64,000 nucleotides of DNA from Camelus ferus (Eukaryota), in assembly GCF_009834535.1 (NCBI RefSeq), contig NC_045717.1:19592001-19656000 (forward strand), in the 5' to 3' direction. Below, in pieces: positions 1 through 62,745 of this stretch (the stretch's first letter is position 1; each line of letters starts with the position of its first letter). The position numbers and the translations under genes were made by a program. The notes below the pieces were generated by a model. That model worked only from the letters and a program-made list of their open reading frames with translations. It was not told where the DNA came from and did no database searches.

Positions 1-90
1 GGAGACAAGGATGAGGTGGCCTGAGGATTGGCATTTGCAGGAAGCTGCTGCCACCTCTAGGGATAAGGGACAGCAGGAAGGGTGGACCTT

Positions 91-141
91 CCTGGGGGGA
101 TTAAACAGAAATACAGGACCCCTGGGGGGATTAAACAGAAA
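91..141. repeat. Local direct duplication, period 30
   Basis: cctggggggattaaacagaaa at 91-111 and 121-141. Confidence 0.85.
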
Positions 142-764
142 ACCCTCAGCCCATTGAGTGGCACACAGTTGGCACTCAATAAATGCTAGTTCTTCGTATG
201 ATCCCCTCCAGCTAAGTGGATCTATCAACTTGCTCCCAGATCGTGGTGCTTCTCTGTTTAAACCCTATACCCCCACCCCATCCGCTATGCCCATCTCCCC
301 ACTCTTCCTTCTCTCACTGCCCCAGCCCCCCTGGCCTCCTCCCTGCTTCTTCAGTGCATCAAACTTGTGCCTGCCTCTGGGCCATGGCCCCTGCTGTGCC
401 CTCCACCTGGACCACTCTTCCATCCACCCTTCCCAAAGCTCATTCCAACTCAACCTTCCTTCCTCAGAGGCCCCCAGAGACAAACTTCACCCTCCTGGTG
501 GTCTCTCACCTAGCACCCTCATCTCTTTCTCCAGAGGCTCATAGCAATTTACATGTCTCTTTGAGGGACTGGTAACATGCCTCTTTCCCAGCATATACGC
601 TACCTGAAGACGGGGACTTTCTCTATCTTGTTCTCAGCTACAGCCCCAGGAGACCCAAAACATAACAAAAACTAATACTTGCCAAACCCTAATACCCGGT
701 GGGGCCCATGCTACTCACCTTAGATGAACTCACTCCTCCCCACGATGCTGCAAGGCTGGAACCA

Positions 765-860
765 TTATTATCCCCTTTAACAGATGAGCAAACTGAGGCT
801 CAGAGAAGTCCCTTGCTTGCCTAAGGCCACACAGATGCTACAGGGACTGCTAGCCCTCAG
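765..860 (-). mobile_element. MIR SINE core remnant (one of many in the window)
   Basis: cccctttaacagatgagcaaactgaggctcagagaag...cctaaggccacacag resembles the reverse complement of the MIR core. Confidence 0.7.
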
Positions 861-1349
861 AGCATCTTTGTGCCCCTTCCTGGTGACAGTGGCAGCTCTG
901 GGAGATGGTACACAGCTGGACCCTAGGCCAGGGTCCCCTCTAATGGGTGCAGTGTGCACAGCCATATGGGGCAACGGAGGTGACTGTGCCATCACCACTG
1001 AGTTGCCTGGATTCAGCAAAGCTTTGCTAAATGAATAACAATCCAAGGGGTCTTGGGAACTGACACCTTGCTCCGTAGGATCCCAAACACTTTGCACAAG
1101 TTCTCGACTATTATTAACTGCCTTCTGCAAAGGTGGGAATTGAGGCATAGATCAGGAAAGCCACTTGCCCTGGGTCACATAGAAATCAACAGCTAAGGCA
1201 GAATTTGAACTGAGGTTCACCAAGCTCCAAATGCTGGGCCATAAACACATGGTCTAAATTAACAAAACCTTTTATAGAGCACCTATGAGAGTGAACCCCT
1301 CACCTTTCTCTTCCAGTTTGCCCAACAGCCCTCAGGAATCAAGGACTAC

Positions 1350-1990
1350 TATTCATTCATTCATTCATTCATTCATTCAACAAACACTTACCAAGTGCCC
1401 GCTGTGTGCCTGGCTCTGCTCTAGAGGGAGGATGTGGATACAGAAATGAATAAAGGGTAAAAGTCCTTGCCCTGGTAGAGCAAATATTCCAATAAGGGAG
1501 ACAGATGATAAATGTCATCACAAATTCAATTGCATTTGTTAGGTGAGGATGTGAAGGACAGGGAGAAATAAAGCAGAAAAGGGGGAACATTTTGGAACAA
1601 CTTCTGAATCAAAACCTGGAGGTGAGAGAAAGAGCCATAGAACGTTGGGGGTGGGGTGTGCTAGAGGCAAAGAGAACAGCCAGTGCAAAGGCCCTGAGGT
1701 AGATATAACATTGGTATGTCAGGGGAAAAGCAAGGCAGTTGGTGTGGCAGGAGCAAAGCAGATAAGGGGGAGAGTGAGGGGAGGTAAGGGCAGGAGGTGA
1801 CAGGCAGTTGTGCAGGGCCTTGTTGGCCATGGGAAGGACATGGACATTTGCACTAAATGAACTGGGAGCAAGGGAGGGTCAAAGGGGGCATGTGATCAGA
1901 CTCAGGTGTTCACAGATGCCCTCTGGCCACTAGATGGAAAAACAGACTTGGCGGAAAGGGTGGCAACAGCAGAAGCTGGGAGACCAGGAT
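1350..1990 (-). mobile_element. L2 LINE 3' remnant with (ATTC)n tail
   Basis: (attc)n at 1351-1379 followed by aacaaacacttaccaagtgcccgctgtgtgcc and a degenerate purine-rich L2 body. Confidence 0.65.
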
Positions 1991-2171
1991 AGAGACAGTT
2001 GCATAGGCCCAGGTAGGAGAGGCTTATGCCCTATTTTACAAGGCAGGAAACTGAAGATCAGAAACATTTAGGTGAAGGAAGCAGGGCTGACCCCAAATCT
2101 GTCTGCTGCCACAGCCGGTGCTCTGTCAGCGCTGAGACCCAGCCCTCTCCTTACCCCATCCATACACTTAC

Positions 2172-2498
2172 TTGAGTGAAGGGCACAGCCTGGCACAATT
2201 CCTGGGCCACTTCCCGTGGGCCCGGCAGCAGAGACACAGTGTCGGCCACACTGCAGCCTGCCTGTCCCCTGCTGACCAGTCTTCTGCAGGCCCAAGAAGG
2301 CCTTACAGCTGCCAAGGGCAGAGGATGGCACCAGGAAGGTTGGGGCCCCTTGATCCAGAGCTTGGGTCTGATTGGCAGCAGCCCAGGGCTGAGGTGGGGG
2401 ACCCTGGGGTCCAGGCCTCGCTGAGCCTATGGGCAGCCAGGTCCCATTGAGTGGGCTCAGGAGGGTGGTCAGCACAGATGCTGCTGGCTGAGTAGCAT
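2172..2498 (-). pseudogene. DAND5: DAND5 (Cerberus-like 2) exon 1, frameshifted pseudogene
   Basis: ATG at 2498 gives MLLSQQHLC* (TGA 2471-2469). A second frame reads LTTLLSPLNGTWLPIGSARP...WAAANQT...LVPSSALGSCKAFLGLQK...GRLQ. After a further shift at ~2247 it reads ADTVSLLPGPREVAQELCQAVPFTQ, followed by donor GTAAGT (2171-2166). This matches recalled human DAND5 exon 1 and the syntenic position next to GADD45GIP1. Exon 2 not seen in the window. Confidence 0.9.
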
Positions 2499-2664
2499 CT
2501 GTCTGTCTGTTGGGCAGCGTAGGACTGGGCTAGGGTCCTGGGCAGCCGACCCTGCTGTCTGGCAAGTGGAGTCTGGGCCCTTCAGATGCACTTTTTTCCT
2601 AAGTTTTTTAAAAAAAATAATTTCTTTCTTTTGGGGTGTGGGGGGTGTGAGGAGGTTAGGCATT

Positions 2665-2768
2665 TATTTATTTGTTTGTTTATTATTTATTTATTTAAAT
2701 GGAGGTACTGGGGATTGAACCCAGGACATGCTAAGCTTGCACTCTACCACTGAGCTATAGTCCTCCCA
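2665..2768 (-). mobile_element. tRNA-Ala-derived camelid SINE (Vic-1-like), ~7-nt internal deletion
   Basis: Reverse complement: gggaggactatagctcagtggtagagtgcaagcttagcatgtcctgggttcaatccccagtacctcca plus A-rich tail. Confidence 0.85.
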
Positions 2769-3760
2769 AATCCACTCTTAATGGCTTGTCCCCCACGTGA
2801 GCATCCTGGGAGGCACCTCTGCAAACCCACAATGGGGATGAGAGTAAACCCCCTACCTGCTGGGTTCTCAGCCCTCCTGCTACCCTGGCAGGGGGCCTGG
2901 GGGCCAGGCCTTCGAGTGTGCGGGCTGTAGAGACCCGGAAGGGCCGCTCTAGAGGCAAGGGCTCAGGCACACAGTGAGGAAGGCCCTGAGGGCTCCTTTC
3001 GCCCCCATTTATTCATTTAGCAAAAGCAGACTTTGCAGTTAGGCTTCTTCAGCTTCCATATAAGCACTGAAACTTCTTGGTTGTGCAGTGCCAAGTCTCT
3101 AAACTTCTCTGGGCCTCAGCTTCCTCGTCTGTAATATGGGGATAAGAACTTTGTAGATTTGTTCTGAAAACCAGAGATGATTTATGTAAGGAGCTTCAAA
3201 TAGAGGTTGGTACACAGTGGCATCATGAGTAAGCTATGATTAACACTATTGCTGTTTTTTTTTTCTTTAGTACCCATTAGAGGCCAGGCATAATTATGAG
3301 CCCTGCGGATACAGGGGGACAACACAGAAAATGGGGCCTCGCTGCCACAGATTTTACATTGCAGTGCAGAAAATAAACAACACAAGATAAATAAGGTGAT
3401 TTCAAAGTCTTAAGTGTTACAAAGATACCAAAATGGGATGTGCCTTAGAGGGGTCAGAGCGGGGGCTTCTGCCCCCAGGGTGGTCAGAGAAGGCCTCCCT
3501 ATGGAGGTAACATTTTTGCAGAGATCCTAGGTGCAGTGGGAACAGCCTGGTGGGGAATGGTGGTTGGAGAGCTGGAAGCACAGAAAGGGCCGCGTCCCAA
3601 GCTTTGGGGCCCCAGAAGCGCCTGAGGGGTCCAGGCCTGGCCCTGATACCTCCTCGGCCCCCATCTCGCACCCAGGTGAGGAGCTGCGGGCCGACGTGCC
3701 TTGAGAAGCCACAGGGCTGGTCGTCCTCGCGGCCCAGAGCTGTGAATGCGATGGGGTGCG

Positions 3761-3779
3761 CTTGCCCTCTGGCGGCGAC
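3761..3779 (-). promoter_or_regulatory. CTCF-like motif in an orphan CpG-rich patch
   Basis: Reverse complement contains CGCCGCCAGAGGGCAAG, matching core CCASYAGRKGGCR at most positions; motif match only. Confidence 0.4.
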
Positions 3780-3889
3780 TCTCGGGACTCCACGGCGGCC
3801 GCGCCCAGGACACCTGTCTCCTGGACGCCCCACCTGGAGGTGCGCAGGTGCCTCCCACTCACCCCACTATAACCGAGCGGCCCCCAATC

Positions 3890-4400
3890 TACCCTTCCGC
3901 TGTTTTCTAGATCCAACTAATGGCAGCTTCGTCCTGCCAAGTGTTAAGGCTCCAAACTTCGGAGCATCTTTAACTCCCCTCTTTCTCTGACCCCACCCCC
4001 TCCCCAATTTGATATGACAGCAAATCCCATCCACTTCAGAATCTGCCCAGAATCTGCCCACTTCTCAGTCCTTCCTCGGTCCCCTACCTGAACATGGTCC
4101 CCATTATCTCCCACCTGAACCAATACAGCCCCTCTACCCTGGCACCCCTGCTCCCGCCTCCTCCCCCACCGAAGTCTGTTCCCCGCAACAGCGGCCAGAT
4201 GGCGCCTGTGAGCACCTAAATCACACGCCATTCCTCTGCTCAGAACCTTCCAGTGCTCCCACCTCACCCGAGTTAGTAGCCCAAGTCCTCACTGCAGTCC
4301 ACCAGGCCTCAACCTGTCTGCTTCCATCAGCTCACCACCCTCGTCTCCCCGTTTTCTCACTTCCTCCAGCCACACGGACCTCTTCGCTATGTCCTAGACT
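3890..4400 (+). mobile_element. L2 LINE remnant
   Basis: cagcggccaga...ccattcctctgctcagaaccttccagtgctcccacctcac resembles the L2 3' region. Confidence 0.6.
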
Positions 4401-8399: not shown

Positions 8400-8564
8400 N
8401 NNNNNNNNNNNNNNNNNNNNNNNNNNNNNNNNNNNNNNNNNNNNNNNNNNNNNNNNNNNNNNNNNNNNNNNNNNNNNNNNNNNNNNNNNNNNNNNNNNNN
8501 NNNNNNNNNNNNNNNNNNNNNNNNNNNNNNNNNNNNNNNNNNNNNNNNNNNNNNNNNNNNNNNN
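8400..8564. other. Assembly gap (165 N) inside an old L1 3' end
   Basis: N run. Confidence 0.99.
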
Positions 8565-10973: not shown

Positions 10974-11144
10974 NNNNNNNNNNNNNNNNNNNNNNNNNNN
11001 NNNNNNNNNNNNNNNNNNNNNNNNNNNNNNNNNNNNNNNNNNNNNNNNNNNNNNNNNNNNNNNNNNNNNNNNNNNNNNNNNNNNNNNNNNNNNNNNNNNN
11101 NNNNNNNNNNNNNNNNNNNNNNNNNNNNNNNNNNNNNNNNNNNN
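10974..11144. other. Assembly gap (171 N) inside an L1 remnant
   Basis: N run. Confidence 0.99.
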
Positions 11145-15215: not shown

Positions 15216-19234
<4,019 letters not shown>

Positions 19235-31400: not shown

Positions 31401-34400
31401 ATATGCTTAGTGCCTTGAACAGGCCCCGGCACACAGTAGGTTCTCAGTAAATGTTTGTTCACTGAATAATCGCCAAAACATAGGGATGTAGGTGGGGGTC
31501 AAATAAGAGGATTTCAGGTGATGATAAGTGTTGGGATAAAAATACAACACAGTGACTTAGTGGGTGATGTTGGTGTCAACATCAGATGGGAGGTCAGGGG
31601 AGACTGCTTGGAAGAGGTGACAGCATTGCCTCTCCCCTCAGGACTCTGAAGACCTACTGGGTGAGCAAGGGTAGTGCCTTCAGCACCAGCATCTCCAAGC
31701 AGGAGACGGAGCTGAGCCCAGAAATGATCTCCAGGTAGGGGGCAGCCCCAGGGTTGGGGGTCGATGTGGGTGGTAGGCAGCCCCGACCAGGCCCATGTAT
31801 CCTGCATCTCTCCATAGTGGCTCCTGGCGGGACCGGCCCTTCAAGCCCTACAATTTCTCAGCCCACGGCGTCCTCCCTGACAGTGGCCACCTGCACCCCC
31901 TGCTCAAGGTCCGCACCCAGTTCCGGCAGATCTTCCTGGAGATGGGGTGAGCACAGGGCCTGGGGCAGGGCCAGCCCANNNNNNNNNNNNNNNNNNNNNN
32001 NNNNNNNNNNNNNNNNNNNNNNNNNNNNNNNNNNNNNNNNNNNNNNNNNNNNNNNNNNNNNNNNNNNNNNNNNNNNNNNNNNNNNNNNNNNNNNNNNNNN
32101 NNNNNNNNNNNNNNNNNNTGACACCTTCTTCCTGCAAGGTGGGTGAGCCCCGCCACACCATCAGAGGTGCTCAGCCTAGGCAGAGCCTTTCGGGGTGACA
32201 TACCATTTTACAGGGTAAACTCTATCCTCAGTGCGGCTAGCAAAGCCTATGTGAGCCACCATCGTCAACTTCTGTGACCTCCTTCCACCTCCCTTCCTGG
32301 CTACCTCAGGGCTTTTGCTGGTCTGTGCCTTCTGCCGAAAACTGTCTTCTCCCAGATCTGCATGGTGGGCTCCGGCATCAAACCTCTGCACAGGTGTCAC
32401 CTCAGAGAGACCACCCTGACATGCCGTTGCCTCCCCAAGTTCTAAAATCTCCCACCACTTGTCTTCCATCTTGGTCTCTGTTTTTTCTTCCACAGCCCTT
32501 AGTACTTTCTGAAATTGAATGACTGTCCAACAAAGGTCATTGTCTTCCCCACCAGGAGGGAACAGGAGGCTGTTGGGTGCCCATTACCTGGCCAGGGACA
32601 ACAGCGTCCTGGTCATCACCATGGCATCCAAAACTTATTGAGCAGTCACTATCCTAATTTTCCAACCAACTATAGGAAGTAGACTGTTAACCCCCTTTTG
32701 CAAATGAGGAAACTGGGGCTCAGAGAGGGGACATCACTTACCCAGGGTCACAGCCTCCAAGTAGTAGAGTTGGGATTCAGTATCAGGCTTTTCAGGCGTA
32801 GTAAAATTGTGTCTGGAAGGAACCATAAGAACTTGCACATTCAAGCATCATATGTCACTGAGCTGCTACTGTGTGCTGAAGTCTCTGTTAAACACTTGGG
32901 TCACAGCCATGAACGGCACAGAAGTCCTTGCCCTGGTGAGACCTGCATGTTCTGGTGGGGGAGACCTGGCCCCTGAGGCTGGCACATGCCTGGTGTGCTG
33001 ACCACTGAGCAGGGAGGCCCTGTGACTTGAGGAAACGATCAATTAGGAGTGGGAGGAAACAGGAGCAGTGAGGTAACAGGACAGTGTGCAGGGCACTCTG
33101 GGCCACAGAGAGAAATTTGGCTTTGGCTTTTTCTCCAAGTGAGATGAGAGCCATGGAAGATTTTGGGCAAAAGAGACATGTGACTGACTCAGGTGTCCTC
33201 AGGTGCCTTCTGGCTGCTGTAGGGGGTAAGGGAGGGAGCTGCACATGTCACTGTCTGTTTTCGGTGTAGTGGCTATTTGAGAAATGCTCCTTGACTGACC
33301 AGATGTTGCTCTGTCCTGCCCAGATCCAGCCCAGGCCCTGCAGCTGCCAATGGACTACGTCCATCGGGTCAAGCGGACTCACTCTCAGGGTGGCTACGGC
33401 TCACTGGGGTGAGGAGGCATCAGGACTTTGGGGTGTCACAGGGAAGGAGGTTGGGGGCCCAAGAGCTAGTTCATGGGCTTCCTGCGTGTCTCCCTGAAGG
33501 TACAAGTACAACTGGAAGCTGGACGAGGCTCGGAAAAACCTGCTGCGCACGCACACAACATCAGCCAGCGCCCGCGCCCTCTACCACCTGGCCCAGAAGG
33601 TGTGGCTGGGCTTGGGCAGTGCAGGGGGCAGGGGGCTGTCATACTGACCTTCTCACCCACACTGGGGCCTGGCCTGCTTGTAACCCCTAGAAGCCCTTCA
33701 CACCGGCCAAGTACTTCTCCATCGATCGTGTGTTCCGGAATGAGACCCTGGATGCCACACACCTGGCTGAGTTCCACCAGATTGAGGGCGTCGTGGCTGA
33801 CCACGGCCTCACCCTGGGCCACCTCATGGGCGTCCTGCGGGAGTTCTTCACCAAGCTGGGTAAGCAGGCAGGCTGGGGCAGGCAGTGTTGGTGGGCAGTG
33901 GGAAGATGCCTTGATCATCAGCCTTATCCTCACTGTTCTGCTTGCCTGCCTCCCCCGACCCAGGTATCACCCAGCTGCGTTTCAAGCCGACCTACAACCC
34001 CTACACTGAGCCCAGCATGGAGGTGTTCAGCTACCACCAAGGTCAGGCTAGAACCCACTACTAGGGCGGGGAAGGAGGTCTCAGGCTGCCCACCGCTCAG
34101 CCTCAGTCCCCGTCACTGCCAAGCCCACACCCCACCTCCCAGGCTAACTGCCAGGCCCAGTATCACCCACACGAGCCACCCTACTCTGCCTCCACAGGTC
34201 TGAAGAAGTGGGTTGAGGTGGGAAACTCTGGGCTCTTCCGCCCCGAGATGCTGCTGCCCATGGGGCTCCCCGAGAATGTGTCAGTCATTGCCTGGGGCCT
34301 TTCCCTGGAGCGGTGAGTACCCAAACCCCTTTGGATGTCTGGCTGCCTCAGTTGGGTGACTTGCCAGGCATGGGGCCTGCACACTTGCAGCCCCATCCAT

Positions 34401-49674: not shown

Positions 49675-55257
<5,583 letters not shown>

Positions 55258-57229: not shown

Positions 57230-57900
57230 ACATAGTTTTGTTGAAGTGAAATTCACATAAAATAAAATAAATCATTTAGAGTGTATAGTTCAGTGGCTTG
57301 TAGTATATTCACGACGTTGTGCAATCACCANNNNNNNNNNNNNNNNNNNNNNNNNNNNNNNNNNNNNNNNNNNNNNNNNNNNNNNNNNNNNNNNNNNNNN
57401 NNNNNNNNNNNNNNNNNNNNNNNNNNNNNNNNNNNNNNNNNNNNNNNNNNNNNNNNNNNNNNNNNNNNNNNNNNNNNNNNNNNNNNNNNNNNNNNNNNNN
57501 NGACATGTTGTGACTGGCTTCTTTTACATAGCATGTTTCAGCCATGTTGTAACATGTATTAGAACTTAATTCATTTTTATGGCAGAATAATATCCCATTG
57601 TATAGATGGACCACATTTTGTTTATCCATCCGTTGATGGACATTTGGGTTGTTTCCACCTTTTGGTGATCGTAACTAGTGCTACTGTGAACGTTGGTGTA
57701 CAAGTATTTGTTCATGTACCTGTTTCCAATTCTTTTAAGTATATACCTAGGAGTGAAATTGCTGGATCATACAGTGACTCTATGTTAAACTTTTTGAAGA
57801 ATCATCAAACTGTTTTCTATAGTAGTTGCACCACCAGCAGTGTGTGATGGTTCTCATTTCTCTGCATCTCACCAACACTTGTTATTTCCTTTTTTTTTTT
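57230..57900 (-). mobile_element. Old L1 3' end containing an N-gap
   Basis: gttttgttgaagtgaaattcacataaaataaaat...atggacatttgggttgtttccaccttttgg. Confidence 0.75.
57331..57501. other. Assembly gap (171 N) inside an L1 remnant
   Basis: N run. Confidence 0.99.

Positions 57901-59730: not shown

Positions 59731-62745
<3,015 letters not shown>

What the first reader, a model, noticed from the sequence alone, without database searches (positions are those of the whole stretch)
2172..2498. DAND5 is a frameshifted pseudogene: loss of a cilia-flow left-right gene
Seen: the ATG at 2498 hits three stops within 24 codons. DAND5-like protein is split between two frames by an ~11-nt insertion (2483-2473) and an ~11-nt deletion (~2247), sizes relative to recalled human DAND5. 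The W of SALGSWKAFLG is C. The donor is intact, but no frame links a start codon to exon 2. Established: DAND5 antagonises Nodal downstream of leftward flow. Together with MMP21, CIROP, PKD1L1 and CIROZ it has been reported inactivated in reptiles/birds and even-toed ungulates, which lack a motile-cilia organiser. Inference: a camelid is an early-branching cetartiodactyl, so its lesions help date the loss (shared or independent).
Basis: partly seen in the sequence, partly recalled or inferred. Interest (0 to 1): 0.8.

Follow-up and report, generated by a model that had tools for sequence, protein, structure and literature searches.

The report
Camel DAND5 is a broken gene
The camel copy of DAND5, a gene that helps set the left-right body axis in most mammals, is disabled by frame-breaking insertions and deletions; this fits the published loss of this gene group in even-toed ungulates, but the camel's breaks differ from those in whales.

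Summary
Window 2172-2498 (minus strand) is DAND5 exon 1 at its ancestral locus, with GCDH and KLF1 downstream. The conserved ATG (2498) meets stops at codons 10, 14 and 24.

Against five intact laurasiatherian genes, the camel has an 11-nt insertion (2474-2484), an 11-nt deletion (junction 2250/2249) and W61C (TGT, 2305-2307). The donor CAA|GTAAGT is intact. The two indels cancel in length, so the ATG and the exon end share a frame, but about 75 codons between them are out of frame.

Contigs of 17 DNA runs from three coded organisms hold every sampled 31-mer across both lesions. An independent dromedary assembly is identical there. In that assembly exon 2, 269 nt left of the window, has a 47-nt deletion that removes three of the nine cystine-knot cysteines.

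NCBI's dromedary 'DAND5' protein models are chimeras that fail the Pfam DAN domain.

None of the three camel indels is shared with the three cetacean indels, so the reading frame was broken independently. dN/dS and rate tests cannot date the loss.

The clade-level loss is already published; the camel lesion map is a modest addition.

The parts
2172..2498 (-). DAND5 exon 1 remnant (327 nt), from the conserved ATG to the last exon base before the donor
   Evidence: Translations; homology; DNA alignments A1 and A3
2474..2484 (-). Camel-specific 11-nt insertion (GCAGCATCTGT) after codon 5; shifts the frame
   Evidence: Absent from narwhal, a second cetacean contig, horse, rhino, cheetah, pangolin, Pteropus and three bat contigs. 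Present in the dromedary assembly L016.
2427..2471 (-). Stretch holding the three stops of the ATG frame: TGA 2471-2469, TGA 2459-2457, TAG 2429-2427
   Evidence: ORF table (ORF 2469..2663 ends MLLSQQHLC)
2305..2307 (-). TGT codon: Trp61 to Cys at a position invariant in 12 aligned orthologues
2249..2250 (-). Junction of a camel-specific 11-nt deletion; returns the sequence to the ATG frame
   Evidence: The cetacean lesion (a 2-nt deletion) starts 11 alignment columns after the end of the camel gap (columns 343-344 vs 321-331 of A3), so it is a different event.
2170..2171 (-). Intact GT splice donor (CAA|GTAAGT). The last exon base is A in camel and cetaceans, G in all intact species.
1..2169 (-). 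Intron 1, first 2171 nt of about 2439 when the GT donor at 2170-2171 is counted. Exon 2 starts 269 nt beyond the left end of the window.
   Evidence: The window's reverse complement 1-6000 matches L016 3010-9012 at 99.6%. Exon 2 lies at L016 9281-9479.
2596..2764 (-). tRNA-derived SINE with an A-rich tail, inserted into the proximal promoter directly after the conserved CCATTAAAAGTGG motif. It is flanked by decayed target-site copies at about 2765-2780 and 2578-2595.
   Evidence: Rfam tRNA hit at 2700-2764, 29.1 bits. In alignment A4 the insert is absent in horse, rhino, cheetah, pangolin and two bats.
50905..51441 (-). Synteny anchor: exon with an acyl-CoA dehydrogenase C-terminal domain (GCDH)
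   Evidence: Pfam PF00441, E = 1.1e-4
60493..61377 (+). Synteny anchor: KLF1 exon (EKLF transactivation domain 2 plus a C2H2 finger)
   Evidence: Pfam PF16833, E = 2.2e-13

Best explanation
This is the unitary pseudogene of DAND5 (Cerl2/Coco/Charon, the Nodal antagonist of the left-right organiser). It sits at its ancestral position in a Camelus genome.

Shown:
- An 11-nt insertion after codon 5 throws the signal-peptide frame into three stops.
- An 11-nt deletion 235 nt further on restores the frame by chance.
- In the dromedary assembly, a 47-nt deletion in exon 2 removes three of the nine cystine-knot cysteines and shifts the frame again.
- No start codon can therefore yield a secreted DAN-domain protein.
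- The exon-1 lesions are fixed across three coded Camelus-like organisms.

Inferred:
- The gene became dispensable because cetartiodactyls do not use the cilia-flow mechanism that DAND5 serves.
- Because none of the camel indels is shared with cetaceans, the reading frame was destroyed separately in the camel and whale lineages.
- The locus is still transcribed to some extent.
For: - Frames and stops.
- Indels against seven other mammals.
- Population and species support: 17 DNA runs from three organisms hold 100% of the 21 sampled 31-mers of 2225-2505. The independent assembly GCA_036321535.1 is identical over exon 1 and 99.6% identical over 6 kb.
- Exon 2: the 47-nt deletion, with a stop after 41 codons in the reference frame.
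- NCBI models P0071 and P0072 use non-homologous upstream exons, the shifted frame of exon 1, a 12-codon intronic exon and the tail of exon 2. They score 0 and 10 bits on Pfam DAN against a cut-off of 22; horse scores 71.
- Relaxation: 13 camel replacements at 95 positions invariant in five intact species, against 4 in narwhal. Camel-specific substitutions run at 0.115 per site in coding sequence and 0.100 in the intron. Lineages with an intact gene show 0.058 vs 0.099 (rhino) and 0.091 vs 0.131 (horse).
- Synteny.
- Literature.
Against: - No read pile-up could be made.
- Exon 2 lies outside the window and was seen in the dromedary assembly and its gene models only.
- dN/dS on the camel branch is 0.49 (CI 0.27-0.90). 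It does not differ significantly from the background of 0.35 (p = 0.31), and omega = 1 over the whole branch is marginally rejected (p = 0.02-0.13). Selection tests therefore do not demonstrate relaxation on their own.
- In the reference frame there is no nonsense codon, only the three indels.
- The whole genome could not be searched for a second copy.
Confidence: 0.9

Rival explanations
1. One loss in the cetartiodactyl ancestor. On this view DAND5 stopped being used, for example through a regulatory change or loss of its upstream flow module, before camels split from the other even-toed ungulates. The lineage-specific indels are only later decay.
For: - PKD1L1 and MMP21 are reported eroded in nine artiodactyls, including alpaca and Bactrian camel, 'in the same ancestor' (PMC7498332).
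- The camel coding substitution rate equals its intron rate.
- The 3 coding indels match the 3.6 expected if the whole camel branch were neutral.
- Camel and cetaceans share G to A at the last exon-1 base and two replacements at otherwise invariant positions: R72Q and V144I.
Against: - No disabling lesion is shared between camel and cetacean.
- Stem-branch omega is 0.33, like the background.
- The narwhal coding-to-intron rate ratio (0.049/0.075) resembles that of lineages with an intact gene. Narwhal has only 4 replacements at invariant positions.
- Omega = 1 over the whole camel branch is marginally rejected.
- The promoter SINEs of camel and narwhal belong to different families.
Confidence: 0.4
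2. The gene is still functional through the alternative upstream exons that NCBI annotates (283- and 245-aa 'DAN domain family member 5').
For: Two dromedary models exist. Contigs of RNA-seq runs hold 38-57% of the sampled exon-1 words, so the locus is probably transcribed.
Against: - The models start with charged, non-homologous sequence instead of the signal peptide.
- They read the last 30 codons of exon 1 out of frame, which loses Cys102.
- They lack Cys116, Cys126 and Cys130.
- They fail Pfam DAN.
Confidence: 0.04
3. The lesions are assembly or sequencing errors.
For: None found. The equal and opposite 11-nt indels look odd at first sight.
Against: The sequence is identical in an independent dromedary assembly. 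All sampled 31-mers across both lesions are present in contigs of 17 DNA runs, from at least 11 samples, at least 6 studies and 3 organism labels.
Confidence: 0.01
4. An intact DAND5 duplicate or retrocopy exists elsewhere in the camel genome.
For: Not testable with these tools, so it is not excluded.
Against: A search of 5.8 billion proteins returned no camelid DAND5 other than the two chimeric models at this locus.
Confidence: 0.04

Closest known systems
Loss of the left-right flow module (DAND5, PKD1L1, MMP21, CIROP, C1orf127/CIROZ) in sauropsids and Cetartiodactyla (Szenker-Ravi et al. 2022, Nat Genet 54:62; seen only through citing papers)
   Same: Same gene, same clade and same rationale: dispensable where the left-right organiser lacks motile cilia.
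   Different: In reptiles and birds the gene is absent from a conserved syntenic block. In the camel it is still there, 570 nt alignable, with only three indels and no nonsense codon. The held literature gives no camelid lesion map, and I could not check whether camelids were sampled in the original paper.
PKD1L1 and MMP21 erosion in nine even-toed ungulates, including alpaca and Bactrian camel (Turakhia et al. 2020, PMC7498332)
   Same: Companion genes of the same pathway, inactivated in camelids.
   Different: Those genes are heavily eroded (up to 98% of coding bases deleted) and were assigned to one ancestral event. DAND5 is not mentioned in that paper, is lightly damaged, and its lesions differ between camel and whale.
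Cetacean DAND5 remnant (narwhal GCA_005125345.1 locus L017, and contig L001 from an ENA metagenome assembly)
   Same: Same two-exon structure and the same locus type. It is also frameshifted, and it also has SINE insertions at the same promoter target.
   Different: The lesions differ: -2 nt in exon 1, -17 nt and +1 nt in exon 2, and Cys184 to Arg. The start region and Trp61 are intact. The SINEs are CHR-like, not the camel's tRNA-like element.

Membership tests
DAND5 orthologue (DAN family, Pfam PF03045) | Sequence homology of exon 1 to DAND5, with an aligned start codon and donor | tested here: met
   E = 4.6e-26 to 7e-20. The ATG and donor columns are conserved in alignments A1 and A3.
DAND5 orthologue (DAN family, Pfam PF03045) | Ancestral genomic position (19p13.13-type block with GCDH and KLF1) | tested here: met
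   GCDH-type exon at 50905-51441 and KLF1 exon at 60493-61377. The gene order is recalled from the human map, not tested here.
DAND5 orthologue (DAN family, Pfam PF03045) | Uninterrupted ORF from the signal peptide to the end of exon 1 | tested here: not met
   Stops at codons 10, 14 and 24; the middle 75 codons are in another frame.
DAND5 orthologue (DAN family, Pfam PF03045) | Nine-cysteine DAN cystine-knot domain | tested here: not met
   A 47-nt deletion removes Cys116, Cys126 and Cys130 in dromedary exon 2. The camel models score 0 and 10 bits against a cut-off of 22. Exon 2 lies outside the window.
Unitary pseudogene | Disabling mutations at the original intron-bearing locus, fixed in the species | tested here: met
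   The intron is retained. The lesions are present in 17 DNA runs from three organism labels and in two assemblies.
Unitary pseudogene | No functional copy elsewhere in the genome | not testable with these tools
   Indirect only: no other camelid DAND5 protein in the collection.
Unitary pseudogene | Relaxed selection on the lineage | tested here: inconclusive
   Omega is 0.49 on the camel branch against a background of 0.35, p = 0.31. The coding rate equals the intron rate, and there are 13 replacements at invariant sites.
Cetartiodactyl loss of the cilia-flow left-right module | Companion genes PKD1L1, MMP21, CIROP and C1orf127 also inactive in the same genome | not tested
   They are not in this window. 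The literature reports PKD1L1 and MMP21 erosion in Bactrian camel and alpaca.
Cetartiodactyl loss of the cilia-flow left-right module | A single ancestral inactivating lesion shared across suborders | tested here: not met
   No indel is shared between camel and cetaceans. Suina, Ruminantia and Hippopotamidae could not be sampled.

The most novel reading that the evidence does not exclude
DAND5 outlived the rest of the flow-sensing module. PKD1L1 and MMP21 were eroded in the cetartiodactyl ancestor, but DAND5 stayed under selection as a flow-independent Nodal antagonist. It was then disabled separately, by different indels and different promoter SINE insertions, in the camel and whale lineages. 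Its decay would give a second, later time point in the rewiring of left-right patterning.
Probability: 0.4. Interest if true: 0.55.

Novelty: already known. Interest (0 to 1): 0.3.

Why it matters
It adds a lesion-level record for Tylopoda, the earliest-branching living cetartiodactyls, to a published clade-wide gene loss.

The practical points are two:
- The dromedary 'DAN domain family member 5' protein entries are mis-annotated chimeras and should be flagged as a pseudogene.
- Camel and whale carry non-overlapping lesions. DAND5 cannot simply be assumed to have died once in the common ancestor, as PKD1L1 and MMP21 are said to have done.

If dense sampling confirms this, the order in which the left-right module was dismantled becomes testable.

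Tried and rejected
- Read pile-up. I substituted a k-mer presence search limited to the lesion-bearing stretch.
- Pig, ruminant and hippo sequence. A protein-pattern scan of the metagenome contigs found 134 pattern matches but no relative. A DNA-pattern scan for the conserved LCNSCVP stretch found nothing. A protein search with the camel exon-2 ORF found no candidate. The unnamed ORFs proved to be bats, cat, dog, mustelids and human when compared with named proteins.
- The Szenker-Ravi 2022 paper is not held, so I could not check whether camelids were among its species.
- Dating by dN/dS. My own GY94 branch model gave wide intervals: the neutral share of the camel branch is 0-85%. An indel clock (3 seen, 3.6 expected) and the rate ratio point to mostly neutral evolution. 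The two approaches overlap only loosely, so I give no date.
- tblastn suggested a 'CFGPRCSPGWGS' motif in camel exon 2. The DNA alignment showed this to be intron tail read through into the deletion, not a preserved CxGxC.
- At first I read the cetacean 12-nt gap as a loss of the donor. The re-alignment shows CAA|GTAGGG, so a GT donor remains.
- Earlier notes of this scan held nothing on this locus or these genes.

Full report
**What is at the coordinates**

On the minus strand, window 2498-2172 aligns base for base with DAND5 exon 1 of other mammals, from the ATG to the splice donor.

- The ATG frame reads MLLSQQHLC*PPS*AHSMGPGCP*, with stops at codons 10, 14 and 24.
- The DAND5-like sequence LTTLLSPLNGTWLPIGSARPGPQGPPPQPWAAANQTQALDQGAPTFLVPSSALGSCKAFLGLQKTGQQGTGRLQ is in a second frame.
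- The end of the exon, VSLLPGPREVAQELCQAVPFTQ, is back in the ATG frame.
- A protein search with the open middle frame returned DAND5 of colugo, manatee and horse, plus unannotated exon-1 ORFs, at E = 4.6e-26 to 1.3e-5.

One refinement: the two indels are equal and opposite, so the start codon and the exon end share a frame. Only the middle of the exon is displaced.

**The lesions, measured against real sequences**

I fetched the genomic loci of horse, rhino, cheetah, pangolin and Pteropus, all with intact two-exon genes whose splice sites I verified by exact translation. I also fetched narwhal and three pteropodid-bat contigs.

Against all of them the camel has:
- an 11-nt insertion, GCAGCATCTGT, at 2484-2474, directly after codon 5;
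- an 11-nt deletion between 2250 and 2249;
- TGG to TGT at 2307-2305, giving Trp61 to Cys, at a tryptophan invariant in 12 orthologues.

The donor CAA|GTAAGT is intact.

**Locus and species**

The window carries a GCDH-type exon at 50.9-51.4 kb and a KLF1 exon at 60.5-61.4 kb. This is the expected neighbourhood of DAND5; the gene order is recalled from the human map.

The first 6 kb of the window match dromedary assembly GCA_036321535.1 at 99.6%, with 21 mismatches and one gap. The window is therefore a Camelus genome, but not that assembly.

**Are the lesions real?**

Instead I asked which public runs hold the 31-mers of window 2225-2505, the stretch that spans both indels. Contigs of seventeen DNA runs hold all 21 sampled words; they come from three organism labels, at least eleven samples and at least six studies. 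The independent dromedary assembly is identical across exon 1. An assembly artefact is excluded at contig level, and the lesions predate the split of the sampled Camelus forms.

**Exon 2**

Exon 2 lies 269 nt beyond the left edge of the window, at L016 9281-9479.

- In the dromedary it carries a 47-nt deletion relative to horse and narwhal.
- The deletion removes the codons for Cys116, Cys126 and Cys130, which include the CxGxC motif of the cystine knot.
- It also shifts the frame, so the reference frame ends after 41 codons.

Even a repaired exon 1 could not give a DAN domain.

**The annotated camel proteins**

NCBI lists two dromedary 'DAN domain family member 5' proteins, of 283 and 245 aa. 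They are built from:
- non-homologous upstream exons (window about 3651-3841 and 2857-2949);
- the shifted frame of exon 1, read through to the donor;
- a 12-codon piece of the intron;
- the tail of exon 2.

They begin with charged sequence instead of the signal peptide and lack four of the nine cysteines. They score 0 and 10 bits on Pfam DAN against a cut-off of 22, whereas horse scores 71. They are gene-model artefacts on a transcribed pseudogene. Contigs of two RNA-seq runs labelled 'reproductive system' hold 57% and 38% of the sampled exon-1 words.

**Shared or independent?**

The narwhal locus, and a near-identical cetacean contig from an ENA metagenome assembly, carry other lesions:
- a 2-nt deletion in exon 1, starting 11 alignment columns after the end of the camel gap;
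- a 17-nt deletion and a 1-nt insertion in exon 2;
- Cys184 to Arg.

None of these coincides with a camel lesion. What camel and cetaceans do share is:
- G to A at the last base of exon 1;
- two replacements at otherwise invariant positions, R72Q and V144I.

The reading frame was therefore broken independently in Tylopoda and Cetacea. I could not obtain pig, ruminant, hippo or New World camelid sequence.

**Timing**

My own GY94 branch model on seven taxa gave these omega values:

| Branch | Omega |
|---|---|
| Background | 0.35 |
| Camel | 0.49 (profile interval 0.27-0.90) |
| Narwhal | 0.56 |
| Cetartiodactyl stem | 0.33 |

No branch differs significantly from the background. Omega = 1 over the whole camel branch is rejected only marginally: p = 0.023, 0.036 and 0.13 under three codon-frequency models.

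Other measures point to long neutrality in the camel.

| Lineage | Lineage-specific substitutions per site, coding | Same, intron |
|---|---|---|
| Camel | 0.115 | 0.100 |
| Rhino | 0.058 | 0.099 |
| Horse | 0.091 | 0.131 |
| Narwhal | 0.049 | 0.075 |

- The three coding indels match the 3.6 expected from the camel's intron indel rate.
- The camel has 13 replacements at 95 positions invariant in the five intact species; narwhal has 4.

These estimates overlap only loosely, so the date of inactivation is unresolved. The cetacean copy looks younger as a pseudogene than the camel copy.

**Promoter**

All intact species have a conserved block ending in CCATTAAAAGTGGrTCTGG, about 115 nt upstream of the ATG. 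In the camel, a tRNA-derived SINE with an A-rich tail (window about 2596-2764; Rfam tRNA 29.1 bits at 2700-2764) is inserted exactly there, flanked by decayed target duplications. The narwhal has two CHR-like SINEs in tandem at the same target, each with its own duplication. The elements belong to different families, so these too are independent events. That they disrupt the core promoter is inference.

**Comparison with what is known**

Loss of DAND5, PKD1L1, MMP21, CIROP and C1orf127 in reptiles/birds and even-toed ungulates is attributed to Szenker-Ravi et al. 2022 by three papers I could read. The paper itself is not held.

Turakhia et al. 2020 report PKD1L1 and MMP21 erosion in nine artiodactyls, including alpaca and Bactrian camel, assigned to one ancestor. 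They do not mention DAND5. No held paper names both DAND5 and camel.

The finding is thus an instance of a published clade-level loss.
- the camel lesion map;
- the mis-annotation of the dromedary protein entries;
- the absence of lesions shared with cetaceans.

**Verdict**

The phenomenon is already known, so interest is modest.

Noticed in passing
window 2578-2784 (minus strand); narwhal L017 about 2640-2960: The same A-rich promoter target (TTAAAAGTGGATCTGG, about 115 nt upstream of the DAND5 ATG) was hit by retroposons in two lineages: once in the camel (a tRNA-like SINE) and twice in tandem in the narwhal (CHR-like SINEs). Each insertion has its own target-site duplication. The site is uninterrupted in horse, rhino, cheetah, pangolin and bats.
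   Followed up: partly
window 3651-3841 and 2857-2949 (minus strand): NCBI's dromedary DAND5 models take upstream exons from a GC-rich stretch with long ORFs on both strands (3417-3990). This may be a CpG-island promoter whose transcripts read into the pseudogene.
   Followed up: no
window 2172 (minus strand); L017 3325; L001: The last base of exon 1 is A (CAA) in camel and both cetaceans but G (CAG) in all five intact species and the bats. This synonymous change at donor position -1 is the only candidate shared change touching a splice signal.
   Followed up: partly
window 8400-8564, 10974-11144, 17003-17174, 31979-32118, 57331-57501: Five runs of N, 140-172 bases long.
   Followed up: no
window 1345-1385 (minus strand): A short (GAAT)n microsatellite, about eight units, in DAND5 intron 1.
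   Followed up: no
L001-L004 (ENA assemblies ERZ27291708-714): Four metagenome assemblies hold a DAND5 exon-1 contig whose product differs from narwhal's at 3 of about 100 residues. Their host DNA is therefore cetacean.
   Followed up: partly
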